Positions 2,603-53,524 of a stretch of DNA of 64,000 bases are shown here, in pieces (the stretch's first letter is position 1; every line of letters begins with the position of its first letter). A model generated the notes under the pieces. It searched no databases, was not told the origin of the DNA, and was given only the letters and a program-made list of their open reading frames with translations. The stretch spans positions 124,001 through 188,000 of the forward strand of contig JALMLS010000065.1 of NCBI GenBank assembly GCA_038496445.1, given 5' to 3'. The DNA is from Trichosphaerium sp. ATCC 40318 (taxonomy: Eukaryota > Protista > Tubulinea). The position numbers and the translations under genes are program-made.

Positions 2603-2720
2603 ATTGTGTCTGTCATTCAACGCTTACTTATATTTCTAGAGGGTGAGCTCTTAGCACTTTAGCAGATCTAGAAAGAATTGACAAGCCTGTCAATGGTGTA
2701 GATCTACCACAATGTGAACT
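2603..2720 (+). mobile_element. Degenerate relic of the left end (TIR plus subterminal region) of the 21275-26556 transposon family
   Basis: ATTGTGTCTGTCATTCAACGCTTACTTATATTTCTAGAGGGTGAGCTCTTAGCACTTTAGCAGATCTAG aligns by eye with 21274-21345. Confidence 0.7.
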
Positions 2721-4258
2721 ATTTGCTTGACAATACTTTCCTTCATAGTGTGGCTTACGTAACTTAAGTAATAACAAAATTCAATGTCAGCTCACCATCT
2801 ATCCATTATTGGCAATATTACCTAGGTATGCACTGTGCGTTCAAGCCACAGAAGTCATTTGGTAGCTAAAAGAAATGGTACGATGGCTAAAAGCAACCTA
2901 TTGGTATGATTAGACTCAAACACTGTTCGACGTTGTTTCACGTGATAAAAAACCAACTGTATTGTACAGGTACGTGTAAAAGTTACTAACACTACAACTA
3001 GCCTGCCTACGCAATCAATAGCGCTCTCACGGCATCAACAGGGTTATAGCGTTAAAAAATCATAACTATTCAAACCAGTAAAACGACACTACCGTATACT
3101 TTGTAAACGCCACCAGGTATCAAATATGTAAATAAATAATTTTGGTTTCGGTTTGAAAAATCACGTGTTTTGATACGTCTTATTTATAACTTTTTCGCTT
3201 GAAGCCTGCTCCCAGTTCGTCTGATTAAACTTGAATGAGACATACAATAACTCAGTTTACTTTTTCCTTGCAAGTTGTTTATGAATACATTAAACTCAGG
3301 GTGGCTACATCACGGTCTGTGGGTTACCTAGATTATTCGTTTACAAGCATGTTGGGTATAATAGTCGTAGTAACTCCGTTTTATTAATAAAGGTAGATTA
3401 TCACAGTACTGTACGTCTCAGTTTAGGAAATAACTGTTGTTTGTTTTTTAAAAGCTTTAATCCTGCACAGAACCTCAAGTAGTTTGCGTACAATACATAA
3501 CATCATAGCTATTACATCAGTGTTAGAACGTGCTAAGAACTAGTATAGCTTACGTACGTGTAGTGCTAGTAGCATCTGTAACCATAGCATCCGTGGCTTG
3601 GACGGGAGATTGTAGGACGAGGAGGATGGGTTGGGCGTGGAGGAGGGCGTGTAGGTCTACATATTGATGGTCTACAACCGCCTCCAGAAGAAATGCTAGG
3701 CCGTACGTTAGCGTGGTAACAAGGGCGATCAACTCCGTAGTAAGGCATGTTGCGTTGTGTTGGTGACAAGTTGTAGTTTGATGTCTAGTGTGAAAGTTGT
3801 TAAGTGACGTTTTCATATTTCTTGAAGTTCAAAGTGCATATTACGACATTTGTCTGCATATATCATGTACAAACCTAGCACAGGTGTTGGCTTGAGGAAA
3901 CAAAAAAATATCACGTGTTTCGCCCTTTGGTGAAATATGACAGGTTGAATTATTTTGGTAGTTTACACTAAACGCACTATTCGAAACGCACTACTCGAAA
4001 CATACTAGAAGTTTAAGAAGTGGTAAGGAAGTGTACTAATACTCAATCCTTGAACAAACTTATATTGGAACGAACATGTTTGTCTATATTCTCTACGCGT
4101 GTGCTCACTGTACGACACTTTAACAGTAAAAATAGGCGGACATAGTGGTGCACTGTAAACTACCATTAGTAGTCAGTGAAGGTGGGAATACAAACAAGTA
4201 GCTTAACAGTGCTAAAATACATTCATTTCTCATCATCCTATCAAACAACAACTCTCAT
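2631..4258 (+). repeat. Segmental duplication, direct copy of ~50481-52201
   Basis: Collinear with small indels across the peptide 3' flank, peptide gene and bidirectional promoter; similarity ends at CAACTCTCATAA, just before the partner ATG. Confidence 0.9.
3566..3748 (-). CDS. 60-aa Cys/Pro/Arg/Tyr-rich peptide, copy 1
   Basis: MPYYGVDRPCYHANVRPSISSGGGCRPSICRPTRPPPRPTHPPRPTISRPSHGCYGYRCY; same length and frame as the paralogs at 27861 and 51582; intronless. Confidence 0.8.
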   Translation of the reverse strand: MPYYGVDRPCYHANVRPSISSGGGCRPSICRPTRPPPRPTHPPRPTISRPSHGCYGYRCY

Positions 4259-19828: not shown

Positions 19829-21028
19829 TTAATATATAATGTGAGCACCAGTTAAGGCCTTTATACCTTTATCAGTAACACCAGTTCCATCAAGAAAAAT
19901 TGCATGAACACCAACCAAGTATTTAACACCTGCATCTGTAACATTTGTGTAACAAAGATTAATCGTATGCACTCCAGCCAATGTTTTCATACCCTCATCT
20001 GTAACTTTTGTATTGCAAAGATTAATTGTATGAACACCAGATAATGCTTTAATACCTTTGTCTGTTACTTGTGTGCCTTTAAGTTTAATTGTATGGACAC
20101 CAGCTAGCGCTTCAATACCGCCATCTGTAACTTTTGTAGAGTTAAGATATATTGTATGAACTCCAGCTAAGTACTTAACACCTGAATCTGTCACTTTTGT
20201 GCCACTAAGATCAATCATATGCACTCCAACTAATTCTTTAACACCTTCATCTGTTACTTTTGTAGAATTAAGATGTATTGTATGAACTCCAGCCAATGCC
20301 TTGATACCATCATCAGTAACTTGTTTACAGCGCCTTAAACTAATTTTATGGATGCCAGCTAATGCTTTAACCCCTTCATCGCTCACACCTGTATTCGTGA
20401 GATTGATTGTATGAACACCAGCTAAAGCCTGAATACCATCATTAGACACTTTTTCACAATTGCGTAGATTAATTTCATGAATGCCAGCCAATGCTTTAAT
20501 CCCTTCATCACTCACACCTGTGTGTGAAAGATTGATTGTATGAACACCAGCTAATGCCTTGATGCCTTCATCTGTCACAAAAAATGCACGAGATAATTGT
20601 ATTTTTTTGATTCCAGAAAGTTGTTTGAGGTGACCATCAGTGATGAACGTACACTTGCTACTAAAGTTAATACTGTGAATACCTTTTAACTTTGTAAAAT
20701 CAACATTTGCTTTCTTGATGCCCTCATCAAGTCTGAGGGAGTGCACTCCTTGAAGGTACTGTAATTGTTTCTGTTTGATAGGGAACTTGATGATTATCGT
20801 GTTTGTTTTAATGAGATGAGGCACTGTTTTGAATAGTTTTTTCAGCGAATGTTTTGATCTGATGACAATCTCTCTTGTATTTCTGTATCCCACGTGTTGT
20901 GTTGCGACCATTTTTAACGATTTTGAAGTGCGGACTACCGAATTCATAGTTACCTTAGATACAAAGTGTAGAATGTAAACAATGACTTCAACGGGAATCT
21001 CATCAAAGAATGCGCTATTTGAGTTCAT
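19829..21028 (-). CDS. F-box/leucine-rich repeat protein (intronless)
   Basis: N-terminal F-box (FDEIPVEVIVYILHFV); about 12 repeats of VHTINL..T.VTD.G.KAL.G; a relic of the same repeat lies at ~19430-19590. Confidence 0.88.
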   Translation of the reverse strand: MNSNSAFFDEIPVEVIVYILHFVSKVTMNSVVRTSKSLKMVATQHVGYRNTREIVIRSKHSLKKLFKTVPHLIKTNTIIIKFPIKQKQLQYLQGVHSLRLDEGIKKANVDFTKLKGIHSINFSSKCTFITDGHLKQLSGIKKIQLSRAFFVTDEGIKALAGVHTINLSHTGVSDEGIKALAGIHEINLRNCEKVSNDGIQALAGVHTINLTNTGVSDEGVKALAGIHKISLRRCKQVTDDGIKALAGVHTIHLNSTKVTDEGVKELVGVHMIDLSGTKVTDSGVKYLAGVHTIYLNSTKVTDGGIEALAGVHTIKLKGTQVTDKGIKALSGVHTINLCNTKVTDEGMKTLAGVHTINLCYTNVTDAGVKYLVGVHAIFLDGTGVTDKGIKALTGAHIIY

Positions 21029-21072: not shown

Positions 21073-21274
21073 GGGGTTGTATGGTTGTGTTTTAGAGTGC
21101 CAAGTAAACGTAAAGAGGCGTCGTCTATTTATTCTAAGCCGTATGACTTACCCTGACTTAATACACGTTCCAGCTATATATCATCTAGACGTAATCAACA
21201 AAAAACGTGAAGTGTCTTACTAGCTGCTGCGGTTTTATTTCTTGAAAATAAAACTACACTTGAAAGCGAACATA

Positions 21275-21296
21275 TTGTCTGTCTCATTCAAGTTTT
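21275..21296 (+). repeat. Left TIR
   Basis: TTGTCTGTCTCATTCAAGTTTT. Confidence 0.92.
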
Positions 21297-21437
21297 ACTA
21301 ATATTTTCTAGAAAGTGAGTTTCTAGCACTTTCAACAGATCTAGCAAGAAATGACAGATCCGTCGGATCTACAAAACTACCAAATGTGAATGTAGTTTTT
21401 CTCGCATACTCACAAAAAGAAAAAACACAAAAAAAAT

Positions 21438-22613
21438 TTACTCCTTTATTTGGCGACAATGTCTGTACATGTGGCTCAGACTATCACGAGTCATCATGGC
21501 CAACGTCATACCAATTTCAGCTTCCAAGGGCGCATTTCCGCGATGATATCGAAGTCTGTTTTTTATAGCAGCAAATACGAACTCACAGGGATTTAACTCA
21601 GGAGAGTACTTTGGAGTGAGCATCAAAGAAATATTATTAGCTTCACAAGCCATTGTTACTGCACCCAAAGATGCTTTGGATACGTGAATAGGTGCATTGT
21701 CACAAATAAAAACATCTCCTGGAACGAGTGAACCACTTCTCAGGCAATGGAGAACAAAAGCCCCCCACTCAGAGGAACAGTTTTTCCCATACGACATCAT
21801 TGAAGTGATTGGAGCCTGTAAAAAAGAATAAATGTAGTTGAAAAAAAAGTCATTAAAAAAAACAAATGTCGTACCTGGTCTGGAGCTATAGATGTTAAAA
21901 TCGTGAGTGTAGCAGTGCTTTCAAACGGTTGATGTTCAATAACAATCACCTTTTTACCCACAGGACCTCGCCCATATTTGCGGTACAATGCTTAAAAAAA
22001 AGGTAACAAAAAAGAAGCAGCAAAAAAGTTGGTCTACCTTTCGAAACAAAGTGTGATTCATCAGCATACTTCAAACGAGCAGGATCCAAATTCATGATTA
22101 TCTTAGCATAACGTTGATAATATAAGAAGTTATCAACTGTGTATTTGCGCACTTGTTTGTGTTCAACAACCAAAACAAATGTTAAACAAACACAAAAAAC
22201 GGAGAAACATTGTACCTTCCATGTCCAATTTATTGCCAAAAATCTCCTACTAATAAAACTGCGAGAAACAGTTTGAGGAGAAATCACTCGGTTTATAAAA
22301 GTTACGTATTCTTGGAGCAACGCACGTGGGTTTCTGGTATGTATCTCAATAATCATTTTCCAAATCATTTCTTCTTCCGCTAGCAAAGTTTGTTAACAAA
22401 AAACTGAATAGCTTGCTTACCATCTGTAAACTTGATGTTACGTCTTCCTCCGTAAGTGTTTGAATGGTATGTAGGATCTTTGTATTTTCGCAAGTGGTAT
22501 GATGCGCGAGCAGTTGATGTTTTGAACGCTTGTGCTGCAAATTGTACACCATGAATAAAAGCACACTCACCCAAAAGAGCATTTGTTTCTTGTGATGTTG
22601 TTCTAGTGGACAT
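21438..22613 (-). CDS. IS630/Tc1-like DDE transposase (DD38E), spliced
   Basis: LKYADESHF, ICDNAPIH, PKYSPELNPCE; N-terminal HTH-like region with GGRR; three canonical introns plus a 45-nt intron-like segment ending in TG. Confidence 0.92.
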
Positions 22614-22652
22614 TTTAAAAAATAAAAAAAAACCCAAAAGTAACAAAATACA

Positions 22653-25600
22653 ATGAACGGACCCACCAGAGATGACACTCCAGAGTACTGGGATCCACCT
22701 CAATTTCCTAATCCGCCCAAAGGGCAAATATGCAGATGTTGCCATAATCCAAAATCAGCCTATCAAATACGTGGTAGGCACAGGTGCCCTGTAGATCCCA
22801 TTACAGGTCTACCTAAATTATGTAATGACTTTAGAAAGTGTCGGCAAGGGCGTCGTATGTACTTTAATGCAATCCAAGTTACTGACTTTTTCTTAGACAT
22901 CCACATAAACACTCCTTCACCAAGGAGGATCCAAGAAGTCGAGGCTATGCACCGCCGACGACAAATACAAGTGCAATCTCCGAGTCACCAACCTCAAGTG
23001 TCAAGTAAGGAAAAACAACAAAAGCCACAAATGTCAAAGCCTTGGTTAGAATCAAAAGAAGCTCAAACAGTTGTACGTACTTTTGTTTGGTTTTTTGCCA
23101 TAAAAAGTAATTAATGCGAGTAGATGAAAGAGCTTGTGAGCCAATTGGCTTTACACATAACTCCACAGACATTGAACCTATTACAAAAAGCTCGCGCTAA
23201 CAGTGTGACACATTCGTCTGGCATTGTGAATCCAAACAAATGGAACACAATGATAGAGCAGCTTCGAAAATTAGCAAGCGGAAACGATAAATCAACATCT
23301 GGTAAGCATACGTACCTTTTTATTGCTCAATATTCTAAGGTTGCTATAGGTGACAAAAGAGCTGCCGAAAAATGTATTGCATTAGCTGACCTGCTTACAA
23401 AAAAAGTGCAAGGTACCTGTGGCTATTTACATCAACGCTAACTGCAAAGATAAACTAGGAAAGCCAGATCATCAATCCAATATAAATGCGCGTGCGTTTA
23501 AAAGTTAGTGAACTGAAATGTTCTAGGACATACAAGACGTATTAAATGATTATGACGTACCGGTACAATAATTTTCATTGTTTATGAACTAACAGTTTTG
23601 TAGATGAAGGATAGCACTCACGAATGGCAGAAGACATGGGAAAAGGTACAATACATGTTTCATAAGAACAATAAGTTGACTATGCACCTAGCACCACACA
23701 AACGCTTCTACCAGGGAAATTCTCACTGTACGTTACAGAAAGCGCTTCTTGTATGCTAATGGTACAGCCAACTGAAGAAAACGTGAGGGATACCACAAAA
23801 AACATGGCTCTGGTGCGCAGTTTAAACGGTTTTTTTTCTATGTGTACTATGTCTATATTTAGAAGGTGCACAACTCACAAGCTAGCGAACCAAAAGGGCT
23901 TTGTAGGATCTATCCTTCTGCCACTGACAACGTTAGTTTGAAACAAAAAGTAGCACAACTAATTTTTTGTAGTTGCCTGTACCGCAAAAGAAGGGAGCCA
24001 GAAGCCAAAAACAGGTACAAAAATGATGTTAGCTTTTGCTCATTTAACTAGCGCACATTGTCAACAAAGCGCAAGTTTGCTAAACTACAACGCAAGAATG
24101 GCAGAAAGGTACATGCAAGCATCACGTGTTTTTTACAGACGTGAAACTAAAAACCCAACTTTAGAAAGCAAAATCACAACAAAAAAGACGCAACCGTAGC
24201 ACGCAACACACGGTACACAGGCTTTTATTTTGTTACAGGCGTTCATGACAGCATAGGTGTTGGATGATTATGGCTTTTCAGAAGGCGAGGTACTGAAACA
24301 CTTTGTATAACACTGTTTTGTTCCTAAGTATGTTCCAAAGGATGTTATACCGCCACCAAAGAAGCGCAAGGCCAAACACACGCAAAAGAAATTACCCCCA
24401 AAGGTACAGTGTGGAAACTCAATTTTTCGTGTTCTTTACTTCAGAACACGTATTTTTCTGAGACCACGTGCTTTTTGGTAAACATTTGTACAGGTAAATT
24501 CTAAACGCTCATTAAACCCATATTTGAGCCCAGATTTCATGGTATGTTAGGGTTGTGGTTCGGTTACTAACTGCTTTTTTAGTCTTTTGGTAACAATGAC
24601 AAAACAGATGTGTTAGATCTCACGGCTTTTGAAAATGACAGTGATGATTTGCTTGATAGTGTACGCACAAAGTTGTCAGTTTCAAAACTTAAAGATTCTT
24701 TAGTTCTCGTCTTATGACATGGAAGTACGTTTTGCGTATTAGTTGTACATTAAGGTGTATAGATTGATGATCTTGAGTTTGCGTTGTACACACAGTCGGA
24801 TGAAGAGATTTACCCACGGAAACGCTCTAAGCGCCCAGTACACACAGTATGTTTTTGTTTGCTGAATCTTTGCTAGCCTCCGTTTTCTGCTGAAGCATAT
24901 GATGAAGATGAAGCTCTACAAAACGCAATAAAAGCTTCATTGACAGAAGCTAAAATGGTTGACCCAACAAGTTTGGCGATTGCACAGGCAGATGTACTTT
25001 TTTACCTAGTTAAATGCTGCTAAGTAAATTGATAGGCTGGTGCTGATGTGTTTTTGGCTCAAGACCGCTTCTTTATTGCTGTAAGTGCGCTTTCTTAATC
25101 ATCTCATGACTTTTTTTAGTTTAACAGTGAATTATTGACTAAAAAAGAGCGAGAAGTGGTTGCTGAAAATGTAATTTTGAAACTTGCACATTACTGTCCA
25201 ATGGCTATAGTGAAATGGGTACAAACTCTTCTCACGTCACATGGTAATTTGCATTTTAGGTAAACAGTGAATCTGCTTCTTCTTTGATGACCCAAGGTAT
25301 GCGAAACCTCATTGATATTGTTGGAGTACGTTGTGGTTTAATTGGAGAAGCTAAATTTACTTACTTTGGTTTAGGTAAATAGTGGTGCAGCTGCGCCAAA
25401 AACTTCACAGTCTCAAGCTTCTGCAACTCAGGCCCCTACAGCTCTTACGTTCGCTCCTGCAACTCAGGCTCCTACAGCTCCTACTTTCGCTCCTGTAACT
25501 CAGGCTCCTACAACTCCTACTTTCGCTCCTGCAACTCAGGCTTCGGCTCTGGCCCTACCTTTGTTACCATCTCATGCTCCTGCAACTCAGGCCCCTACAG

Positions 25601-26354
25601 CTCCTACTTTCGCTCCTGCAACTCAGGCTCCTACAACTCCTACTTTCGCTCCTGCAACTCAGGCTCCTACAGCTCCTACTTTCGCTCCTGAAACTCAGGC
25701 TTCAGCTTTGGCCCTACCCTTGTTACCATCTCATGCTCCTGCAACTCAGGCCCCTACAGCTCCTACTTTCGCTCCTGCAACTCAGGCTCCTACAACTCCT
25801 ACTTTCGCTCCTGCAACTCATCTGGCCCTACCCTCGTTACCATCTCGCGCTCCTGCAACTCAGGCGTCAGCTCTGGCCCTACTCTCATTGTCATCTGATG
25901 CTCCTGCAACTCAGGCCCCTACAGCTCATACTTTCGCTCCTGAAACTCAGGCCCCTTCTTCAGCTCCTGAGTTGTCTCCATCTTCACCATCTCCTCAAGC
26001 TCCAATTGCATCGCCTGTACCAACTTCTTGTAAGTTTATCCTTACATTAATTATTTGTTAGAGTTCTCTTAACGTTGAAGAGTTACGCAAGCGCAGATTG
26101 CAGAGATTTTCACAAAGAAATTCGGTAATAACATGTTTTGGAGTTGTGTTCTTATTGACTTAATTTAGAATGGTTTTCCAATGGCTCGTGTTTTAGAGCC
26201 ATTGAAACCAGAGGTGCTCTGCTTCTGTGGGCGAGTTGCGCGCTATGTGCCTGGTAGTAAAGGAAGACGTGGTGGCACATATTCATGTGCGGATGGTGTA
26301 CCCACTTGTGCCTTTTTTCAACTCGAAAAGAATGCAATGTACTGCAAGCAATAA
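22653..26354 (+). CDS. Transposon cargo protein (~830 aa): Cys/His cluster, NLS-like motifs, acidic region, UIM, Ala/Pro/Thr repeats, VBM-like motif, C-terminal GRF-type zinc finger
   Basis: About 26 exons joined by hand in one open frame; DEDEALQNAIKASLTE, EELRKRRLQRF, LCFCGRVARYVPGSKGRRGGTYSCADGVPTCAFFQ. Confidence 0.8.
25420..25960 (+). repeat. Coding minisatellite (33-bp unit, APATQAPTxPTF-type) with higher-order repeats
   Basis: GCTCCTGCAACTCAGGCTCCTACAGCTCCTACTTTC-type units repeated more than 10 times. Confidence 0.92.
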
Positions 26355-26534
26355 ATAGTTAGGTTTTTTTTTTTGTGTCAGTTTTTTTTTACAAGGAGAG
26401 GTTTTTAGTCGCTTTTTTTGCAAGTTCTTAGCTTTTGAATCACATTTTGCTAGTTTTAGCAGAATTGTCAGATCTGTCAGATCTGTCAGATCGGGCAGAA
26501 ACTGGAGTTTTTTTGCTAAAACTCAGTCTGGCTG

Positions 26535-26556
26535 AAAACTTGAATGAAACAGACAA
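26535..26556 (-). repeat. Right TIR
   Basis: AAAACTTGAATGAAACAGACAA, the reverse complement of the left TIR with one mismatch. Confidence 0.92.
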
Positions 26557-26667
26557 TAACAGTTTGACAAAGAAACGTGATAAAAATAAAGAGAGAAATT
26601 GTTTTATTTTTGACACAGAGACCAAGATCAGTCTTGTACAACTGTAATTGGAGATTCATTTCAGTAT

Positions 26668-27232
26668 TTATTTGGCAGTGACATCAGCTTCCTTTGAAGC
26701 ACCACCCCATTTGGAGTAGTCGACTTCAAATTTTGGAGCCAATTGAAAGATACCATGGAAGTTTTGCTTTGGCATATCCTTGTCGAGTTTTGGGAATGCG
26801 AACTTGAATCCTCTGCTCTTAGTTCTAAAAAAAATAATGGTGAGTTGACGTTGGTGAGGCGAAGAAAATTGAAAACGTCGGATTCGATGCTGATTTTGGA
26901 GAAAGACAAAAGACATGAACGACCACTTTTATTCATTGATCAAAAAAAAACAGGTCGAAAGTTGTTTGTGCTTTGAGTACGTACTTTCCAGCAGGGATAT
27001 GACCAAAATCGAGTGTAACTTTATCGAGATCACCAGAACCACCGCATGTCATGACCTCAGAGTGGAAAGGAGAGTCTTCATCAACATCGACATAAGCCAA
27101 GCAGTCGGTGATTGGAATTGGAAGCTTGTTGGTAAACTTGACTTTACAACAGTATGTGGTCTTGTCATCGAGGTTTGCTGGTACGTCGTACTCAACTTTA
27201 ACACAGCCGTCTTCAACACAGATAGAAGTCAT
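26668..27232 (-). CDS. 134-aa protein without signal peptide, predicted Ig-like beta-sandwich, copy A
   Basis: Two exons (GGAAA|GTACGT...TTTAG|A); VKFTNKLPIPITDC and DFGHIPAGKTKSRGFKFAFP recall transglutaminase-C/CARDB-type Ig domains (fold inferred). Confidence 0.85.
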
Positions 27233-27860
27233 TGTTTTTAAGAGTTGTTGTTTGTTGTTTGTTTGGATGATGAGAAATGAATGTATTTTAGCACGGTGTT
27301 AAGCTACGTGCTTGTGTATTACCGCCTTCACTGACTACTGACAATAATGGTAGTTCCGGATAAAGTTCACTATGACAGAATATTTTTGCCTTTACAGTGT
27401 CAAAACCAGCGAGCGCACGCGTAGAGAATATAGACAAACCCATGTTCGTCCATTCTTAGTTCGTTCAAGGATAAACAAAATGGCTGTTTATATTCGCTTC
27501 CAATCACTTTCTCCACTCCTCTAGCCTGTTTTTGGTACGTAGTCGCTTGGTGACGTTAGGAAACTACCAAAAAAAGTCTAGTTGTCATAAATCACCAAGA
27601 GCCAAACTATCAGAAACACCACTTTGTTTTCATTGTATTAGTCTTAAAAAGAATTAAGAACACGTGACGTTATAACTTTTTTATTTCCACAAAACCAAAA
27701 CACTCCAATAGCTAAGGTTGTCAAACAAGCACATGAAATACATCTGAACACAAAATTATTAGTTTAATGGTTCAAATAATACTTGCGGAAAGGTGGAACG
27801 CCACTTAAAAACTTTGACTCGAAATCTTACTACAACTCTTCACAAACAACCTAAAACAAC

Positions 27861-28043
27861 ATGTCTTACTACGGATGTCATCGCCCTTGTTACAACCCTT
27901 GCCCACGCCCAAGCATTACTTGTGGAGGCGGTTGTAGACCATCAATATGTAGACCTTCATGCCCACCTCCGCGCCCATGCCACCCTCCTCGTCCTACAAT
28001 TTGCCGTCCAAACCACGGATGCTATGGTTACAGATGCTACTAG
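27861..28043 (+). CDS. 60-aa Cys/Pro/Arg/Tyr-rich peptide, copy 2 (11 Cys)
   Basis: MSYYGCHRPCYNPCPRPSITCGGGCRPSICRPSCPPPRPCHPPRPTICRPNHGCYGYRCY; A-rich leader and downstream AATAAA. Confidence 0.85.
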   Translation: MSYYGCHRPCYNPCPRPSITCGGGCRPSICRPSCPPPRPCHPPRPTICRPNHGCYGYRCY

Positions 28044-28401
28044 CACTACACGTACATAAAATAAACCAGCTCTGGGCACGTTCTAACACTGATGTTATAG
28101 TGCGAGGGATAAAACGACTTGAGTTTCTAATGCAAAGATAAAATGTAAAAAACAGTCATTTCCTTTCTCAATAAAAAAGAAGTTCCTACTTGCGTTAGTT
28201 CCATGTCCTCGTATACAACTGGTTTGTAGTCAAGTGGTCTTGACTGCTTTTTGGCGTAGCAGTAAGCTAGACTTATAGGTTTTCTATTGCTTGAAAAATG
28301 CGAGACCGAGTTGCCGTGTACTCTGATCAGTGAGCAATATCCCTTTATGTCATATTTACACTTGTACTATTTCAATCAAAACAGAGAACCTTTAATGTTC
28401 T

Positions 28402-30192: not shown

Positions 30193-30320
30193 TACCAGTT
30201 TTGTGGAGTTGTTGGTGTGAAGCGTAAATAATTGTCTTTACTGTACAGCTTAATAAAAGGTAGAATAAAACAAGAATAGTTAACATAATAAAGTTATGGG
30301 TTTATTACTTTGTGCATTAT

Positions 30321-32389
30321 TTACGGTTGCCACTGTCTGAAGAAACTTATGGTACTGATATCTGAAGGTGTCAAACGCTTTGCCACGTTTATGAAATCAT
30401 CGCCTAAGGGAGGAGACATGTTAACATTAAGAAGATCGAAAAGAAAATTCAAACTCACTCGCAGTACAAATCTCACAAAATTCCGCAACAACAATAGCTG
30501 CCACCACTGGAACAGAATTAGAACCATGATAGTGGTACAAAGGTGATCCGCTGTGTCCTCCGCTTATATCACAATTTGTTCTAACAAGCTAGAAGAATTT
30601 AAGTAAGCTGTATACATTCAAGTTGTTAAGTCTTGGTTGAATTGAGATCTTAACTTACCCTGTTCCACCCATTTACTCTGAAGCTGTAATTGTTTAGTTG
30701 GCAACTTTTTGTATCTCCATATAAAGCACCATCAACACACGACGGTGATGGGGCATTGAGTTTATCACAAGCAGGATATCCTCTGTTGTAATGGTACAAA
30801 CCAGCTAAAGATAGAGCAGGTTTGGCGACATACCCTTAGCACAATAGTCAGCAACAAAAGAAACATTGTAGAAAAATGTACCCATCCATCCTGTAGCTCT
30901 CCAATCCTATCTGGTAAGACGAGTATACCCCAGTCGAAATTTGGAGAATATTCAGTTACGAGTGGATTTCTACTAAATGTCAATATTAAGGCGTATCAAT
31001 GTTGTTACATACCTCCATTCTACAGGTGTAAAATACCATCTGAATGGATCACCAGGTTCAGCGTTTAAAGTGATCGTAGATTGTCCATAAGGTTCGTTTA
31101 TTCTTGAATTCTCGTTTCTACCAGGAATGACAGTAACAGTAAACCAGTTGTTTGTTCCTTGAGCATTAATGCAGTGTGCTATTCACAAAGTTAAATCGAC
31201 AGGTTTTAATATGAGTGTTGTTTAAAGGATACCTGCTGTGAGAACGTGTCTTGGTCCAATCAGAGTACCAGTGCATCTTCCAAAGTCAGATATTGTTCTA
31301 AAACCAATGTGAGTTCGAAAAGTACATCAAAATAAAACGTGTTTGTACCTCCAAGGCCATTGTGTTGTTGGTTCTCTAAGAATTCTGGAATCGTCTGCAT
31401 TGCTCCATCCTCGTTTTGTTGGTGCATTATTTTCATACGAAGGTATGGTATGTATTTTCTTTTTATGTTAGCCACGATCTAAAAGTAAGGTTATGTACCT
31501 CAACGCCAGTCAATCCATCTCTCATACGATTAATTTTTTCAAACAAGTTTGATCCAACTTCAATCTCCCACTCAACCTTTGTTCCTAAATTACATTGTTA
31601 TACTAAGAGATGGCATATCAAAATAAAAATTGATACGTACCAGAGTTAAAAGCAATCAACTTTGTTCTACGTGGTAAGTCTGTCTCGTCTATAGCACATG
31701 ATTAGAGTAACTGAGAATACCATCGATATCATACCTGTTTCTGTACTACCGTCTGTTGTTCTGGTTTCAAAAGGTATTTTAGGCATTTCTGTACGCTCAT
31801 CAACAAGCTTCCCTGTGCCAATAGGAGTAGCCTAAGAAAAACTAGGTAACCGAACACTCAAAAAGTAAAAGGAGCATACCATCAAGTCGTCTGTTATTCT
31901 GATTGGTTTGTTATCTTTTGGCACAATGTTATCAAGAATACTCGATAGTTTCCCAAGACCCAAGGTATCGCAGCTACACTCACAGTCGCATATACTCCGA
32001 ATAGGATACGGTACTGTAGGGACATTGTTTGCATCAAAACAAACTTCCTTGCCATCAATTTTTGTATCTCCAATTGCGATTTGATGCAAATACAAACGGC
32101 GTATACTACAAGTACCAAGGGTACCGACAATGATATTAGTGCATGAAGTGGCAAGAGGTGAGTCACAAACACTTTGACATTTTGATACAGCCATCTCTCT
32201 TACATTTTGTAATGCTTCTGCCTACGAAACAAGTAAACCAACCAATGAATCAAAACAAGGAGAAGCCATAGCTCTATTACTTACCAAAGTACATCCGTAA
32301 GTTTTTGCTGTTACACGATGGCCTTGCGAGTATGCACTTTGTGCATAAAGAGATAGTATCAAGAACGTTGCTAAGATTACCAAACGCAT
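30321..32389 (-). pseudogene. Secreted trypsin-like (V8/glutamyl-endopeptidase type) serine protease, copy 1, with a 1-nt frameshift
   Basis: CTGTLIGPRHVLTAAHC, FDWGIL, CDISGGHSGSP; GAGCTACAGGA versus GAGCTTACAGGA in the paralog breaks the frame near 30894. Confidence 0.7.
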
Positions 32390-33787
32390 CAAGAGAGGTT
32401 GCTTTACTTGCTGCGCTATTGTCGTTTGGGATGTGAAATTCATGTGAAAACCAGCGTCACGTGCTTTCGCTAAGCTATCAGGGTCCTTTCATGCGTATTC
32501 ACTGTATGTGTGCAAATGTCTTCAACCCGAGGAATATTTTCCAGCATCTGGCGCGTGATAAAGGCTTACAAACCATGCACTAAGGCGGTGTTACCAATCG
32601 CCTCAAATTATTCACTTAAATTTTGTCTTGCCAGGAAAAGTATGATATGAATCATTCACTTCCGCTTTTTTTGATGTTTATGGTTTCCTTGGATGCGCAC
32701 TTAATTGAGGGAAAAGGCGGAAACCTTGTCCTTTGCATCGATACATACCAGTACTTCCGTCTGTAAATTATTTAAATATTCACTTAAACATTGCCTTTGT
32801 CATGTGAATTTGTTCAAGAAAACCGATATCAAGCTGCTTGACGTATGAAATCTGTTTAGTAAAGTAAAGCTACGCCAAACTAGTTAGTTTTGCTAGCGCT
32901 AGTTTTGTACTTTTTGTCTTTGTAGTAAGTGTCTTTACAAGAAAGTGCTGTAGAAATTGCAGACTTAGATACCTTTCCACATGCCTACAAATGAACCTAC
33001 ACAAATAATTTGCACTATTTTCTGTTAACACGTGGTGCACAACAACAAAGTGTTTGATAGGTTTTCCAAGACAGTCACACAATCATGTATCCTTCGTAAT
33101 ACTCGTGAAGTGATAAAAAATAAGCAGGCTTACATCTGAGGAAAAAAGGTATAACGCATTGGGTTTCTCAGCTCGTTGGCAGGGCTTGACTTGCTGCTCA
33201 GGGAAAACAACTTGACTTTTCAGGTTGGCGCAGGCTGCCAAAAGTATACAATGCTGTTGAATAGACACGTTTTAGAATCGCTTGCTTCTCGGTAAAACAG
33301 CACTTAGTGGCGTTGAGTTAAACTGAAACAGTTTCAGGAAACAATAAGGTTTATGCCAAATCTTCGTACGACATTACCTACAGCTTACATAGAACTCATA
33401 TCAACTGTGACACATGTATTACTCATATCAATATTGTGAACTCCTACAAGAGTACCTTGTGTTGTATGAACACTACAGCATTGATCAATCAGTTCCAAAG
33501 CCATCATGGAAGCAGGTGTTGTTTAAGACATGGACCTATTTGACACTTAGTTTATTTCGGACAAGAGGCATAACTGTAGCTCCGTTAAGCAATATTTGAA
33601 CAACAATGCGCTTGTTTTACAGTTTCACTTTTCGATGTAATTATGTATAAAGTGGGGCCTGCCTTACGGCACTCGCCTCTGGTTTGTAAAAAAAAACTTA
33701 TTTTACAGTCCTACGCTTTTTGTTTCCAGTTCCTTTTGAAATCACGTGACTATTTCAAAATAAAAATACAGCAGTGCTCATCGCCAC

Positions 33788-34988: not shown

Positions 34989-35279
34989 ATACAGAGCTTG
35001 ATCGTTTAGAATAATTAAAAATGAATCATTTTGATCTATCTTGGTTACTTACAAAGATTTGATTGAATTTCTAAATCTGTTAGGAAAAGTATAGTTCCAT
35101 TGAATATAAGGTTAACTTGCACCTTTGTATTGGGTGGAGCATTCAGCTAGTCAATACAAACGCAATATTAGCAAGAAGTAGACGGTTGTACTGGTGTAAA
35201 ACGAAAATGACTAGGCATATTGCCGTTTTTAAACCAATTAAGATGTATGCTGTGTTTATTTTTAGTATTTTTAAATTAT

Positions 35280-37352
35280 TTACGGTTGCCATTCTCTGAA
35301 GAAACTTATGACACTGATATCTGAAGGTGTCAAGCGTTTGGCTGTGTTCACAAAATTATCGCCTAAGGGGAGACGTTAACAGTTAAAGAGGTACTAAAGA
35401 AAACGGAATGAACTCACCTGCACTACACCTTGAACAATGTTGCCACACGGCAATAGCTGTCACTACTGGAACGGAATCTGGGCCATGATAATGATACAAA
35501 GCAGATCCACTATGTCCACCATTCATGTCACAATTTGTTCTTACAATCTAGTAAATATAAGTACACACAGCATTTGAAAGTTGAGCTGCTAACTTACCCT
35601 GTTCCATCCATTTGCTATGGAGCTATATTGACTAAGTTCACACTCTTTGATATCTCCATACAAAGCGCCATCAACACATGTTGGCGATGGTGAATTGGCT
35701 GCACCACATACAGGATATCCTCTGTTGTAATGATACAAACTTCCCAAAGATGAAGCAGGTTTGGCGACATACCCTTAGCACAAATAGTTAGCAACAAAAT
35801 AAACATGTAGAAAGATGTACCCATCCATCCTGTAAGCTCTCCAATTCTATCTGGTAAGATAAGTATACCCCAGTCGTATGGTGAAGCAGCGTATCCGGAA
35901 ATAGCTGGATCTCTAACATAAATGTCAATAATTACCAAGAACGGTTTCAATATTGCATACCTCCATTCTACAGGTGTAAAATACCATCTAAATGGGTCAC
36001 CAGGTCCAATGTTTGCTGTGATTGTTGATTGCCCATATGGACGTGTGTTTGAATTGGAGTTTTCATTTCTACCGGGAATGACAGTAACAGTAAACCAGTT
36101 GTTTGTTCCTTGAGCAGTGATACAGTGTGCTATTCACAAAGTTAAATCGAGAGGTTTTAATATGAGTGCTGTTTAAAAGAATACCTGCTGTGAGAACGTG
36201 TCTTGGTCCAATGAGAGTACCAGTACAACTTCCAAAGTCGGATATTGTTCTAAACCAATGTGAGTTCAAAAAGTACGTCAAAATAAAACTTGTTGTACCT
36301 CCAAGGCCATTGTGTTGTTGGTTCTCTAAGAACTCTGGAATCATCTGCATTGCTCCATCCTCGTTTTGTTGGTGCATCATTTTCATACGAAGGTACTGCA
36401 CGCGATTTCTATACTATGTTAGCGATACACCAAATATAAAGACTAAAGTAGTATTACATACAATAGCGCCAGTCAATCCATTTCTCATACGATTTATTTT
36501 TTCAAACAAGTTCGATCCAACTTCAATCTCCCACTCAACCTTTGTCCCTAAATTATGTTGTTAGGCTTAAAAGGGTATTGAATCAATAATAGATACTTGT
36601 ACGTACCAGAGTTAAAAGCAAGCATTCTTGTTTTACGTTGTAAGTCTGTCTTGTCTACAAAGGGGTTTGTTAGAAGACGTAAATAGCAAACAATATAAGC
36701 CAATACCTGTTTCTGTTCTACCATCTGTCGCTGTACTATCAAAAGCATCGGTCTCGCCTGTTGGCATTTCAATACGTTTATCAACTAGTTTCCCCATGCC
36801 AACAGGAGTAGCCTAAGAAAAATTAGGTAACCGAACACTCAAAAGTAAAAGGAGCATACAATCAAGTCGTCTGTAATTCTGATTGGTTCGTTATCTTTTG
36901 GCACAATGTTATCAAGAATACTAGATAGTTTCCCAAGACCCAAGGTATCGCAGCTACACTCGCAATCGCATATAGTTCGAACAGGATACGGTACTGTAGG
37001 GACATTGTTTGCATCAAAACAAACTTCCTTGCCATCAATTTTTGTATCTCCAATTGCGATTTGATGCAAATACAAACGGCGTATACTACAAGTGCCAAGG
37101 GTACCGACAATGATATTCGTGCATGAAGTGGCAAGAGATGAGTCACAAACACTTTGACATTTCGATACAGCCATCTCTCTTACATTTTGTAATGCTCCTT
37201 CCTACGAAACAATTAAAGGGAAGATTTAAACAATCTCTATTATTTACCAATATGCATCCGTAAGTTTTCGCTGTTACACGATGGCCTTGCGAGTATGCAC
37301 TTTGTGAATAGAGAGATAGTATTAAGAACGTTGCTAATATTACCAAACGCAT
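35280..37352 (-). CDS. Secreted trypsin-like (V8-type) serine protease with Cys-rich N-terminal domain, copy 2
   Basis: Signal peptide MRLVILATFLILSLYSQSAYS; triad motifs LTAAHC, YDWGIL, CDMNGGHSGSA. Confidence 0.85.
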
Positions 37353-38324
37353 CAAGAAACGTGTTGTTTTGCTTGTTTTGCTTTTGAAAAATATTTTGGT
37401 GGCGTCAGATGGATTTTCACGTGAAAAAAGTTGCGTCATGTGCGTTCACTGTATGTGTTTATTGGACTTCAAATTGGGATTTGCTTGATGGGCTTCTTGA
37501 TGATGTGGCTTCACGTTGTCAGGGCGCCAACTTTTTGCCAATTGCGGCTTCTGGTTTGTGCGCCACTTCCTTTTCTGTTAAATCTCGTATTTCTTGCGGG
37601 GAACTTCTGTTTGGGTTTTTTCGGAGGCTATTGATTCTTATGGGCTACAAGTAAACGCATGACAAAAAACATGGGTCTTACGTTTCGATCAAAAACCAAT
37701 ACTTGCGCCATATAAATTAAATATATATATGTATATTATTATTATAATAATATTCACTTAAATTCTGCTTTATCTTGTGAATTAATTCAATTAAAACCTA
37801 CCTGACCATGCTCGCTCGCATGTAAGATCCCTCCAAGTGGCACCCAACTTCGAAGCGCATTAAAACACAGTTATTTACACTAGTTTTATTCTAACCTGTA
37901 TTTATGGGTCTTGGCATGCCGTTTCGGAGGTGAAGCGTTATTCTATTGTTAACTTGGCCTTTCGTTGTTTAAAGAGACAATTGCTCTTCTTTTTCCACGT
38001 CATTATACTTCTACAGGCTTTCATCTACGGTCAAGGTTAATCTGCTTGTCTTCACAACAGTCGAAGAGATTTGACATTTCATCTTTCTAGTACGTACCTC
38101 CGTCATACAGCTAAGTGTCCAGACCACTGCCTACGTAAAACCTTCGGCAACGGGCACTGCACAACTAAAATACTCAAGTTCAAATTAATGGTATATTTCA
38201 GCAAGTGTTTTGTTCTCAACATTTATTAATTTTACTTGTCTTTACATGAACTACCAATGGTTGTCATTACTCCGAAAGAACAGAATCTACCAGGAGGCCC
38301 ACAAGGGAGTCGAACCCATTGTCT

Positions 38325-50480: not shown

Positions 50481-50565
50481 CAGAAAGTGAGTTCTTAGCA
50501 CTCTAGTAGATCTAGTAAGAATTGACAATTCTGTCAAAAGGTGTAGATCTACCACAATGTGAATT
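50481..50565 (+). mobile_element. Second, truncated relic of the transposon left subterminal region
   Basis: AGAAAGTGAGTTCTTAGCACTCTAGTAGATCTAGTAAGAATTGACA matches 21310-21356. Confidence 0.7.
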
Positions 50566-51399
50566 ATTTGCTTTACAATACTGTCCTTCATAGTATGGCT
50601 TACTTAACTTAAATCATAGCAAAATTTTCAATGTCAGCTCACCGTCTATCCATTTTCTTCGCTGGAAAGATCGCAATATTACCTAGGCACTGTACGTGGT
50701 ACGTTCAAGCCACAGAAGTCATTTGGTAGCTAAAAGAAAACGTACGATGGCTAACAGCTAAATATTGGTATGATTAGACTCAAACACTGTGTTCGACGTT
50801 GTTTTACGTGATGAAAAACCAACTGTATTGTACAAGTAAGTGTAAAGTTTACTAGCACTACAACTAGCGCCTGCCTACGCTGTCAATAGCGCTATCCCGG
50901 CATCAATAGGGTTATAGCGTTGAAAAAATCATACACAACAATTCAAACCAGTAAAACGACGCTACCATATGGTTTGTAAACGCCGCCAGGTATCAAATAT
51001 GTAAATAAACAATTTTGGTTTGAGTTTGAAAAATCACGTGTTTTTGAGACGGATTCATAACTTTTTCGCTTGACGCCTGCTCCCAGCAGGCTGATTAAAT
51101 TTTGAATGAGACTCTACAATAACTCAGTATACCTTTTTACCATTACTGGTTGTTTAGGGTGGCTACATCACGTCTGTGTTACCTAGATTATTCGTGTACA
51201 AGCAAGGTGGGTACAATGGTATTAGGAACTTTGTTTTATTGATAAAGGCAGGTTTTTACAGTTTAGAAATTTCTGTTGTTGGTTTTTTAAAAGATTTAAT
51301 CTTGCACAGAACCTCAAGTAGTTTGCGTACAATACCATAACATCATAACTAGTAAATCAGCGTTAGAATATGCTAAGAACTAGTATAGCTTACGTAGTG

Positions 51400-51582
51400 C
51401 TAGTAGCATCTGTAACCATAGCATCCGTGGTTTGGACGGCAGATTGTAGGACGAGGAGGATGGGTTGGGCGTGGAGGTGGGCATGAAGGTCTACATATTG
51501 ATGGTCTACAACCGCCTCCGCAAGCAATGCTAGGGCGTGGGGTAGGGCGGTAAGTAGGGCGATGAACTCCGTAGTAAGGCAT
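51400..51582 (-). CDS. 60-aa Cys/Pro/Arg/Tyr-rich peptide, copy 3 (7 Cys)
   Basis: MPYYGVHRPTYRPTPRPSIACGGGCRPSICRPSCPPPRPTHPPRPTICRPNHGCYGYRCY. Confidence 0.85.
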   Translation of the reverse strand: MPYYGVHRPTYRPTPRPSIACGGGCRPSICRPSCPPPRPTHPPRPTICRPNHGCYGYRCY

Positions 51583-52207
51583 GTTGCTGTGTGTTGGTGA
51601 AAAGTTGTAGTTTGATGCCTAGTGAAAGTTGCTAAGTGACGTTTTCATCTTTCTAGAAGTTCAATGTGAATAATTATCCAAATACTATGATGTTTGTCTG
51701 CGTATATCATGTACAACCCTAACTCAGGTGTTGGCTTGAGGAATAAAAAAATATCACGCCACGTGGTTCAAAATGTTGATGTATTTCGAGGTCCGTTATT
51801 GTTTGAAAGAAGTTATTCTACTTGTAACATGAAAATAGAATGATATTTGAGATATTTGTACTTGGTGAAATATGACAGGTAGACTTATTTTGGTAGTTTG
51901 ACTAAACAGCACTATTCTAAACATACTAGAAGTTTAAGAAGTGGTAGGAAGCGAACCAATAATCAATCCTTGAACAAACTTATAATGGACGAACATGGGG
52001 TTTGTCTATATTCCCTACGCATGTGCTCACTGTACTGACACTGTAACAGCAAAAATAAGTGGGCATAGTGGTGAACATTAAAACTACCATTAGTATGTCA
52101 GTAGTCAGTGGAGGCGGGAATACACAAACACATAGCTTAACACCGGCTAAAATACAGTCATTTCTCATCATCCAAACAAACAACAAACAACAACTCTCAT
52201 AAAAACA

Positions 52208-52746
52208 ATGACTTCTATCTGTGTTGAAGACGGCTGTGTTAAAGTTGAGTACGACGTACCAGCAAACCTCGATGACAAGACCACATACTGTTGTAAAGTC
52301 AAGTTTACCAACAAGCTTCCAATTCCAATCACCGACTGCTTGGCTTATGTCGATGTTGATGAAGACTCTCCTTTCCACTCTGAGGTCATGACGTGCGGTG
52401 GTTCTGGTGATCTCGATAAAGTTACACTCGATTTTGGTCATATCCCTGCTGGAAAGTACGTACTCAAAGCACAAACAACTTTCGACCTGTTTTTTTTTGA
52501 TCAATGAATAAAAGTGGTCGTTCATGTCTTTTGTCTTTCTCCAAAATTCTTCGCCTCACCAACGTCAACTCACCATTATTTTTTTTTAGAACTAAGAGCA
52601 GAGGATTCAAGTTCGCATTCCCAAAACTTGACAAGGACATGCCAAAGCAAAACTTCCATGGTATCTTCCAATTGGCTCCAAAATTTGAAGTCGACTACTC
52701 CAAATGGGGTGGTGCTTCAAAGGAAGCCGATGTCACTGCCAAATAA
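52208..52746 (+). CDS. 134-aa predicted Ig-like protein, copy B
   Basis: Exons 52208-52455 and 52590-52746 (405 nt); protein identical to copy A. Confidence 0.88.
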
Positions 52747-53524
52747 ATACTGAAATGAATATCCAATTACAGTTGTACAAGACTGATCATGGTCTCTGTG
52801 TCAAAAATAAAAACAATTTAAATAACTCTTTTTTTTCTTATCACGTTTTTTTATCAGTCTTCTCAAAAGTAATCGTGTTCAAACCATACTATGAAACCAA
52901 CCTAATCTGTCAAAACCAAGAACGAACTTGATTTCAGCACGATAGCAAAATTCCAGCCACATGCTTTACTGACAGTCCAGATTGCACAATACCTCAATTT
53001 CTTTACCTAAACACGTGGCATCCTCACGTCAATGTTTCTTGCCCATCTCTCAGGCTTTTCACCCTATTGTCATTGAAAGAGTACCTTTGCTTCGAACATA
53101 CCAAAGCAACTACGCGGCCGATGAGCGTTAGCAAGTCTTCGCCGGCTGGAGGAACTCGGTTATTTTTTCTGAGCAGAATAGACGTTTCCTTTGGCACTAA
53201 CACTCTAAACAACGTCGATTGCACGCTGCCAGCCGGACCAAGTTATGTTCAAAGTTACCCGAAGCTACATTGATCTGTAAAAGGTTGTTTTAACTCATTG
53301 ATAGTTGCAGCTAATGCACCTACAGCCTTTTCTTGACTTAAACTCCTAGCACTTACGACATTTGTTCATGAGTTACAACTGAATTATATACGACAACTTG
53401 CTTGTAGGTTACGTAATTCGAATAAGACTAAGGTTTACTAAAGTACAAAAAAAAGTAAATTGTGTTTTTTGTGATTTTGTTGAATTGTTGTTTCAAAAAA
53501 CGTGCAAGGTCTATTTTGGCTTTC

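What the first reader, a model, noticed from the sequence alone, without database searches (positions are those of the whole stretch)
23488..26168. About 21 consecutive phase-0 introns: a symmetric short-exon gene inside the transposon
Seen: exons bounded by branch point/YAG and GT donors have lengths 30 or 36, 42, 36, 45, 69, 42, 57, 48, 33, 63, 48, 78, 21, 84, 117, 45, 99, 66, 642 and 63 nt (e.g. 23604-23645, 23692-23727, 23768-23812, 23863-23931, 23973-24014, 24052-24108, 24165-24212, 24257-24289, 24341-24403, 24494-24541). All are multiples of 3 and all junctions fall between codons, whereas host genes in this window mix phases 0, 1 and 2. If phase 0 had probability 0.5, 21 in a row would be about 5e-7. 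Any exon can be skipped without a frameshift, as in Schistosoma micro-exon genes, and several exons each carry one short motif (NLS, acidic patch, UIM, VBM). Inference: combinatorial splicing, or tolerance of mis-splicing, diversifies a transposon-encoded protein.
Basis: partly seen in the sequence, partly recalled or inferred. Interest (0 to 1): 0.88.

Follow-up and report, generated by a model that had tools for sequence, protein, structure and literature searches.

The report
Frame-neutral micro-exon gene in transposon
A 5.3 kb Tc1/IS630-type DNA transposon in an AT-rich protist carries, besides its transposase, a second gene of about 25 tiny exons, almost all a multiple of three bases long; its predicted protein looks like a nuclear ubiquitin/p97 adaptor, but nothing here shows that the exons are actually mixed and matched.

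Summary
That alone proves little: permissive GT/AG chaining finds all-phase-0 chains of 8-25 exons almost anywhere. A phase-blind gene-model search, with splice matrices trained on 63 introns outside the element, still gives 20 of 21 phase-0 introns here. Control stretches give 35%, and their longest run is 6. Twelve or thirteen of the 20 introns are well supported, two have same-phase alternative donors, and five are weak.

The gene (22653-26354, + strand) lies inside a real transposon (21273-26558). The element has 24-nt inverted ends with TA on each side, a DDE_3/IS630 transposase on the other strand, and a short non-autonomous relative at 2604-3247.

The roughly 867-residue product is mostly disordered. 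It carries basic stretches that look like nuclear localisation signals, a sub-threshold UIM, a full match to the published p97-binding VBM consensus, and a divergent GRF-like zinc ribbon. No relatives of the two exons searched were found.

Combinatorial splicing is untested. My preferred reading is tolerance of mis-splicing in a string of short motifs.

The parts
21273..26558 (.). Tc1/IS630-type DNA transposon, about 5.29 kb, with TA at both outer ends
   Evidence: The 24-nt inverted ends are 96% complementary. About 100 nt of subterminal similarity. The end 22-mer occurs 3 times in the window against 0 expected.
21273..21296 (+). left terminal inverted repeat
26535..26558 (-). right terminal inverted repeat
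21438..22613 (-). transposase gene; open through three predicted introns (phases 1, 1, 0); no breaks counted
   Evidence: Pfam DDE_3, E 7.6e-11. NCBIfam IS630, E 2.3e-12. Splice model.
22653..26354 (+). second gene: 25 predicted exons, 24 introns, about 867 codons
22653..23072 (+). exon 1 (420 nt), Cys/His-rich, no known domain; followed by a phase-0 intron
   Evidence: Codon log-odds +13.5 bits. No homologues or domains found.
23124..23301 (+). exon 2 (178 nt, phases 0 to 1; asymmetric)
23350..23412 (+). exon 3 (63 nt, symmetric 1-1)
23450..23491 (+). exon 4 (42 nt, or 33 nt from 23459; symmetric 1-1)
23537..23562 (+). exon 5 (26 nt, phases 1 to 0).
23604..23645 (+). exon 6 (42 nt)
23692..23727 (+). 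exon 7 (36 nt)
23768..23812 (+). exon 8 (45 nt); its donor GTGCGC is weak
23863..23931 (+). exon 9 (69 nt); its donor GTTAGT is weak
23973..24014 (+). exon 10 (42 nt), basic
24052..24108 (+). exon 11 (57 nt), basic
24165..24212 (+). exon 12 (48 nt), basic
24257..24289 (+). exon 13 (33 nt), acidic
24341..24403 (+). exon 14 (63 nt), basic stretch that looks like a nuclear localisation signal; followed by the 90-nt intron
24494..24541 (+). exon 15 (48 nt), begins GTAAA directly after the acceptor
24583..24660 (+). exon 16 (78 nt), acidic patch
24704..24724 (+). exon 17 (21 nt)
24763..24846 (+). exon 18 (84 nt; an alternative donor 9 nt upstream), acidic then basic
24877..24993 (+). exon 19 (117 nt), UIM-like motif
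   Evidence: Pfam UIM, E 0.036, 14.3 bits, below the cut-off. The pattern is unique in the window.
25036..25080 (+). exon 20 (45 nt)
25120..25218 (+). exon 21 (99 nt)
25260..25325 (+). exon 22 (66 nt), begins GTAAA directly after the acceptor
25375..26016 (+). exon 23 (642 nt), Ala/Pro/Thr/Gln tandem repeats with periods of 36, 87 and 159 nt; begins GTAAA
26062..26124 (+). exon 24 (63 nt), p97-binding VBM-like motif
   Evidence: Fits the consensus EhRRRRLxhh from PMC5389986. It is the only match in the six-frame translation of the window.
26169..26354 (+). exon 25 (186 nt including the stop codon), divergent GRF-like zinc ribbon
   Evidence: The only hit among 1.84e9 representative proteins is a protein with five GRF ribbons, E 2.9e-5. 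A direct Pfam scan was negative.
2604..3247 (+). short non-autonomous relative of the element (about 645 bp)
   Evidence: The left end is 80% like the element's left end over 83 nt. The right end is like the element's right end.

Best explanation
What is shown: a real, apparently intact second gene sits head to head with the transposase inside a Tc1/IS630-type transposon. It is split by about 24 introns of 30-90 nt into exons that are mostly 21-117 nt. Of its 23 internal exons, 21 are symmetric: 19 are 0-0 and two are 1-1.

What is inferred about the product: it is a largely disordered 'beads on a string' protein. It has basic stretches that look like nuclear localisation signals, acidic patches, a UIM-like ubiquitin-binding helix, a long Ala/Pro/Thr/Gln spacer, a VBM that would dock on the N domain of p97/Cdc48, and a C-terminal GRF-like zinc ribbon that would hold it on DNA.

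What is inferred about the architecture: with micro-exons between very short introns, an exon plus its two introns (102-204 nt) is itself a plausible intron, so exon loss is a likely splicing error. Only exons that are multiples of 3 and carry dispensable motifs survive such errors, because the zinc ribbon downstream stays in frame. The gene probably grew by adding such frame-neutral exons one at a time, which would fit the lack of relatives for the two exons searched. Regulated isoform diversity is possible but not required.

Speculation: the protein recruits the host segregase to ubiquitylated proteins on the element's DNA.
For: - Element.
- Exon and intron coordinates, and lengths that are multiples of 3.
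- Phase-blind modelling against controls.
- Coding frame and exon/intron composition.
- Mixed phases in introns outside the element and in the transposase.
- Motifs: UIM; VBM against the published consensus; GRF-like ribbon.
- No relatives found for exon 1 or for the last exon.
- The link between symmetric exons and disordered segments is established in the literature (PMC3632108).
Against: - No transcript, protein or second full copy was available, so every junction is predicted.
- Five of the 20 introns are weak, and an alternative model with a frame-shifted block scores similarly at some settings.
- Splice signals are weak: frame-free calling finds nearly as many candidate introns on the antisense strand.
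- Short-intron organisms are known mostly for intron retention, which this architecture does not buffer.
- The UIM is below Pfam's cut-off, and the zinc ribbon is not recognised directly by Pfam.
- Both structure predictions were unusable.
- The p97 role is inferred from one 10-residue motif.
Confidence: 0.45

Rival explanations
1. Cargo or captured host gene. The element picked up a host gene, or part of one, that encodes a disordered ubiquitin/p97 adaptor. The symmetric exon structure was inherited from the host copy and has nothing to do with the transposon.
For: The motifs (UIM, VBM, GRF-like ribbon) are host-pathway motifs. Typical Tc1 elements have a single ORF and are about 1.3 kb (PMC7325037). 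Splice signals match those of introns outside the element.
Against: No paralogue of any exon exists elsewhere in the 64 kb. No relative of the last exon was found in 1.84e9 proteins, and none of exon 1 among the 77-245-residue proteins that the search could see. The gene is complete, from ATG to stop, and fills the element exactly head to head with the transposase. A captured origin would still leave the symmetry unexplained.
Confidence: 0.2
2. Model artefact. The region is not coding in this way, or is only partly so. The phase-0 pattern comes from choosing among many GT/AG pairs in A-rich sequence that is open in several frames.
For: Permissive chains of 8-25 phase-0 exons arise anywhere. 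The region admits about 1e27 valid models, 9e15 of them all phase 0. Antisense candidate counts are similar. Ten of the 20 exons that end at a donor are open in two or three frames.
Against: A phase-blind search with matrices trained outside the element gives 20/21 phase 0, against 35% in controls with a longest run of 6. Fifteen of the 20 donors are GTAC, and GTAC is also the commonest donor (25 of 63) in the outside set. Frame 0 wins the codon log-odds by more than 340 bits. Introns are T-rich and exons are not. Motifs that fit published consensus patterns sit in the predicted frame.
Confidence: 0.12
3. Module duplication. The gene arose by repeated tandem duplication of one symmetric exon-plus-intron unit, so that all copies inherited phase 0, with no selection for skippability.
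For: Four exons begin alike: three with GTAAA and one that is 10/12 identical to a neighbour's start. The 642-nt exon is itself a tandem array.
Against: Exon-plus-intron modules and introns are no more alike than shuffled sequences: top score 24 against a shuffled mean maximum of 23.8. No tandem repeat was found in 23488-25375. Module lengths vary from 59 to 159 nt.
Confidence: 0.1
4. A burst of intron gain from a mobile 'introner' with a preference for codon boundaries.
For: Very high intron density, about 6.5 per kb, in one gene.
Against: The introns share no similarity beyond splice signals. Their lengths and signals match ordinary introns outside the element. Only 5 of 20 follow an AG, so a protosplice site cannot explain the phase.
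Confidence: 0.03

Closest known systems
Schistosoma micro-exon genes (MEGs)
   Same: Ten to twenty or more very short exons per gene with symmetric boundaries, so that loss of an exon keeps the reading frame. Automatic annotation finds them hard to trace (bioRxiv 10.1101/2023.06.21.545858).
   Different: MEG introns are 0.1-5 kb; here they are 30-90 nt. MEGs are host genes for secreted proteins and are specific to schistosomes. This gene lies in a transposon of a protist, looks nuclear, and includes exons of 420, 642 and 186 nt.
Tc1 family / IS630 superfamily DNA transposons
   Same: DDE_3 / IS630-type transposase, short terminal inverted repeats, TA at both ends, and short non-autonomous derivatives.
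   Different: A typical Tc1 is about 1.3 kb with one ORF (PMC7325037). This element is 5.3 kb, and 70% of it is a second gene with about 24 introns.
Ciliate TBE and Tec elements (Tc1/mariner relatives with three ORFs)
   Same: They carry further ORFs besides the transposase, one of them a zinc-finger protein in TBE (PMC7325037).
   Different: Different hosts and end structures. No similarity to them was tested or found here. No micro-exon structure is reported for them.
p97/VCP cofactors with linear motifs (RHBDL4, ataxin-3 and others)
   Same: A VBM that matches the consensus, including the RF pair of RHBDL4, combined with a UIM (PMC5389986).
   Different: No rhomboid, Josephin or other catalytic domain. 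A GRF-like zinc ribbon sits at the C terminus. No sequence homology to these proteins was found.
GRF zinc-ribbon proteins (Pfam PF06839, for example topoisomerase 3-alpha-like proteins)
   Same: The cysteine spacing and the aromatic pair of the last exon align with four of the five ribbons of P0001 at 36-42% identity. A cluster member is named topoisomerase 3-alpha-like.
   Different: The Pfam models do not score it. The residues that give the family its name are replaced.
Symmetric exons that encode disordered segments
   Same: Exon-phase symmetry goes with intrinsic disorder and modular evolution (PMC3632108).
   Different: That is a statistical trend across human genes, linked to exon shuffling. 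Here it is a near-total rule within one gene.

Membership tests
Tc1/mariner/IS630 superfamily | DDE transposase of the DDE_3 / IS630 type | tested here: met
   Pfam PF13358, E 7.6e-11, above the cut-off. NCBIfam NF033545, E 2.3e-12 on a 120-residue piece.
Tc1/mariner/IS630 superfamily | terminal inverted repeats | tested here: met
   24 nt, 23/24 complementary, with 0 chance matches expected. Subterminal similarity.
Tc1/mariner/IS630 superfamily | TA target-site duplication | tested here: inconclusive
   TA is present at both outer ends, but no empty site was found to separate the duplication from the repeat end. The short relative has CA on one side.
Tc1 family proper (DD34E) | 34 residues between the second D and the E | tested here: inconclusive
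   The spacing is 33 or 38, depending on which glutamate is catalytic. Not resolved, so no subfamily is assigned.
Micro-exon genes (MEG architecture) | most exons at most 81 nt and multiples of 3 | tested here: met
   Of the 19 exons lying between phase-0 introns, 15 are at most 81 nt, and all 19 are multiples of 3.
Micro-exon genes (MEG architecture) | long introns (0.1-5 kb), secreted product, schistosome lineage | tested here: not met
   Introns are 30-90 nt. The product carries basic, nuclear-type stretches. The host is a protist, probably an amoebozoan. It works like a MEG; it is not a member.
UIM (Pfam PF02809) | match above the gathering score | tested here: inconclusive
   E 0.036, 14.3 bits against a cut-off of 21, over profile positions 1-16 of 17. 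The pattern is unique in the window.
VBM (VCP-binding motif) | consensus EhRRRRLxhh | tested here: met
   All ten positions fit, with one K in place of R, and hh = RF as in RHBDL4. Binding itself cannot be tested here.
GRF zinc ribbon (PF06839) | match to the family profile | tested here: not met
   No Pfam hit at E up to 10. There is only indirect homology to a five-ribbon protein, E 2.9e-5. I therefore call it GRF-like.
Introner-derived introns | introns form a sequence family | tested here: not met
   Pairwise scores equal those of shuffles.

The most novel reading that the evidence does not exclude
A cut-and-paste transposon encodes its own adaptor for the host p97/Cdc48 segregase. The adaptor would be held on DNA by a GRF-like zinc ribbon and would read ubiquitin through a UIM. 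It is built from about 20 frame-neutral micro-exons, so that splicing yields a graded family of adaptors from one gene. This would be a micro-exon diversification system outside schistosomes and inside a mobile element.
Probability: 0.12. Interest if true: 0.85.

Novelty: new variant of a known kind. Interest (0 to 1): 0.6.

Why it matters
Tc1-type elements are usually described as the simplest eukaryotic transposons, with one ORF between two repeats. A copy that spends 70% of its length on a 25-exon accessory gene with host-pathway motifs would show that such elements can carry elaborate accessory functions. A run of about 20 symmetric exons in an organism with short introns would also be a clean natural case for asking whether exon symmetry is selected as insurance against splicing errors. 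Both points become directly testable once transcripts and other copies are examined.

Tried and rejected
- Permissive chaining of phase-0 exons: it finds long chains everywhere, so I rejected it as a test.
- Frame-free intron calling with splice matrices: the antisense strand gives nearly as many calls, so it discriminates too weakly. There was only a mild excess of spacings that are multiples of 3, 12 of 21.
- ORF-bridging listing of introns outside the element: too noisy when unfiltered. I filtered it to 63 introns.
- Metagenome scan for the end repeat: four hits that are one locus sampled four times, sharing only 23 nt. There was no transposase or gene similarity, so it was uninformative.
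- Homologue searches: the last exon gave one distant GRF protein only, and exon 1 gave nothing. A host aminotransferase piece gave nothing, because full-length relatives fall outside the tool's length filter.
- Exact look-ups of three host ORFs: none on record.
- Structure prediction of the last exon and of exon 1 from single sequences: pLDDT 43 and 46, unusable, so I ran no fold search.
- PDB sequence searches: nothing meaningful.
- Rfam and tRNA scans of the window: nothing.
- Similarity among exon-plus-intron modules: none.
- Empty-site comparison with the paralogous flank: homology starts about 8 nt outside the element's right end, and no empty site was found.
- SHP and VIM motifs: absent.
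- Literature search for p97 in transposition: nothing relevant.
- DD34E assignment: dropped as unresolved.
Full report
**Setting.** The window is AT-rich (about 37% G+C) and eukaryotic, with many introns of about 40-60 nt. The commonest donor among the GTA-donor introns collected outside the element is GTAC (25 of 63). No tRNA or Rfam family was found. The nearest eukaryotic relatives of a neighbouring F-box/LRR gene are transcripts of the amoebozoans Stygamoeba and Clydonella and of one JGI transcriptome sample. The host is therefore probably an amoebozoan, but this rests on one repeat protein.

**The observation.** Each is preceded by AG and followed by GT, each is open in frame 0, and each is a multiple of 3 long. 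Two coordinates needed correcting: the first exon is 23527-23556, and the 117-nt exon is 24877-24993. The 642-nt exon ends at a GTAC donor at 26017, not at the GTAAGT 13 nt further on. Introns are 30-90 nt. Fifteen of the 20 donors are GTAC, and most introns have a branch-like CTAAC or CTAAT and end in TAG. Fourteen of the 20 are not multiples of 3, and the six that are all carry in-frame stops. Retention of any intron would therefore break the reading frame.

- With only GT, AG, an open frame and 30-100 nt introns, all-phase-0 chains of 8-25 exons can be drawn almost anywhere in the window, on either strand.
- The region itself admits about 1e27 valid models, 9e15 of them all phase 0.
- Splice-site matrices alone also discriminate poorly. 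Simulated sequence and the antisense strand give almost as many candidate introns.

I therefore built a phase-blind test. Sixty-three introns outside the element were collected by a simple rule: a unique GTA...YAG bridge of 35-65 nt between two long open frames. Their phases are 25:20:18. Matrices and a length prior trained on them were used in a dynamic programme. That programme maximises splice score under the sole constraint of an open frame and has no preference for any phase.

- It gives 20 of 21 introns in phase 0, with a run of 17. Forty-one control stretches of equal length give 35% phase 0, never above 60%, with a longest run of 6.
- Counting exon length modulo 3, which does not depend on frame, the target has 17/22, 17/22, 18/20 and 18/18 multiples of 3 at four penalty settings. 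Seventy-seven controls give 35%, with a longest run of 5-7. The binomial tail for 18/20 at 0.35 is about 5e-7 (my arithmetic).
- Sampling models from the posterior gives a mean phase-0 share of 0.75-0.86.
- The weak ones are two with same-phase alternative donors (23557, 24847), two with non-GTA donors that my training rule penalises by construction (23813, 23932), and the 90-nt intron, which lies outside the training length range (24404).
- At some settings, a model in which exons 23973-24403 are read in another frame scores as well. The exon lengths stay the same in that model.
For the ambiguous block the figures are 23 against 8 bits.
- Introns are 39% T, against 24.5% in exons.

**Upstream of the finding.** The gene can be read from an ATG at 22653. 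Exon 1 (420 nt) and exon 2 (178 nt) have positive coding scores. The introns then run in phases 0, 1, 1, 1. A 26-nt exon (23537-23562) brings the frame to phase 0, where it stays for 20 introns. Of 23 internal exons, 21 are symmetric, two of them 1-1. Symmetry, rather than phase 0 as such, seems to be the rule.

**The transposon.**
- A DDE_3/IS630 transposase lies on the minus strand, 22613 to 21438. It is open through three predicted introns of phases 1, 1, 0, so I count no breaks.
- Inverted ends of 24 nt, 23/24 complementary, lie at 21273-21296 and 26535-26558, with TA at both outer edges and about 100 nt of weaker subterminal similarity.
- The end 22-mer occurs a third time at 3226-3247, against 0 expected by chance. 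Together with a left end at 2604, which is 80% like the element's left end over 83 nt, it bounds a 645-bp non-autonomous relative. Another left-end fragment lies at 50482-50535.

The family is therefore real, and the micro-exon gene lies wholly inside it. Its ATG is 40 nt from the transposase's ATG, head to head. I could not resolve the D-to-E spacing (33 or 38), so I assign no subfamily.

**The product** is about 867 residues, rich in Ala, Pro, Thr, Ser and Lys.
- Exons 23973-24403 are basic and include a stretch that looks like a classical nuclear localisation signal.
- Exons 24583-24846 are acidic.
- Exon 24877-24993 matches Pfam UIM over 16 of 17 positions, but below the cut-off (E 0.036).
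- Exon 25375-26016 is a tandem Ala/Pro/Thr/Gln array.
- Exon 26062-26124 contains ELRKRRLQRF. This fits the published VBM consensus EhRRRRLxhh, with the RF pair of RHBDL4 (PMC5389986). It is the only such match in all six frames of the window.
- The last exon's only relative among 1.84 billion representative proteins is a wasp protein made of five Pfam GRF zinc ribbons (E 2.9e-5, 36-42% identity over the cysteine pattern). Pfam itself does not score the exon.
- Exon 1 has no relatives or known domains.
- Both single-sequence structure predictions failed.

**Mechanism.** I take the gene as real (about 0.8). I read the symmetry as selected tolerance of exon loss in a string of dispensable short motifs. 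An exon plus its two introns is 102-204 nt, itself a plausible intron in this genome, so such losses are likely errors. The gene perhaps grew by adding frame-neutral exons. Duplication of a module is not supported, nor is an introner burst. A captured host gene remains possible, but it would not explain the symmetry. The idea that the protein brings p97/Cdc48 to ubiquitylated proteins on the element's DNA is inference from three motifs. A literature search found no precedent.

**Comparison with known systems.** The architecture works like schistosome micro-exon genes but fails their other defining features. Extra ORFs in Tc1/mariner relatives are known from the ciliate TBE and Tec elements (PMC7325037).

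- Exon sequences were pooled inside scripts only to count bases and residues.
- Slip: in my reasoning I twice recalled, from memory, short motif fragments of known p97 cofactors and of a known Tc1-family transposase. None was put into a tool, and no conclusion rests on them. The VBM consensus is cited from the paper, and the D-E assignment was dropped.

Noticed in passing
24494, 25260, 25375 (exon starts); 25120: Three of the 20 exons begin GTAAA directly after the acceptor, so removing the upstream intron would rebuild a donor-like site at the junction. The same is seen at 0 of 63 introns outside the element, and the background rate after YAG is 0.26% (P about 2e-5). A fourth exon start is 10/12 identical to its neighbour's. 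This could reflect exon paralogy or a recursive-splice-like device for dropping the exon.
   Followed up: partly
23557/23563 and 24838/24847: Tandem alternative donors 6 and 9 nt apart. Both keep the reading frame, and the modelling cannot choose between them.
   Followed up: partly
22613 (minus strand) and 22653 (plus strand): The start codons of the transposase and of the second gene are only 40 nt apart, head to head. The two transcripts must share or overlap their control region.
   Followed up: no
26466-26492 and 21352-21360: A 9-mer occurs three times in tandem just inside the right end, with a one-mismatch copy inside the left end. These may be subterminal binding repeats. Window-wide counts are only mildly above chance.
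   Followed up: partly
2604-3247; 50482-50535: A 645-bp non-autonomous relative of the element, with matching left and right ends, and a further left-end fragment. Both sit inside copies of a larger repeated unit.
   Followed up: partly
26602-28100; 50537-52812; 2692-4251: A unit of about 1.5 kb in three copies, two of them inverted, up to 99% alike. Its homology to the second copy begins about 8 nt outside the element's right end.
   Followed up: partly
30300-32400 and 35270-37360: A tandem duplication with a period of about 4.95 kb, 74-96% identity, apparently of a multi-exon host gene.
   Followed up: no
19829-21028 (minus strand): An F-box protein with more than ten 21-residue LRR_6 repeats abuts the element's left side. 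Its relatives are amoebozoan transcripts and planctomycete proteins.
   Followed up: partly
L001-L004: Four metagenome contigs (35% G+C, one locus in four samples) share an exact 23-nt match with the element's end and nothing else.
   Followed up: yes
23302-23349: This predicted phase-1 intron is 48 nt long and has no in-frame stop. Among the gene's predicted introns examined here (from 23302 onward), it is the only one whose retention would keep the reading frame.
   Followed up: no
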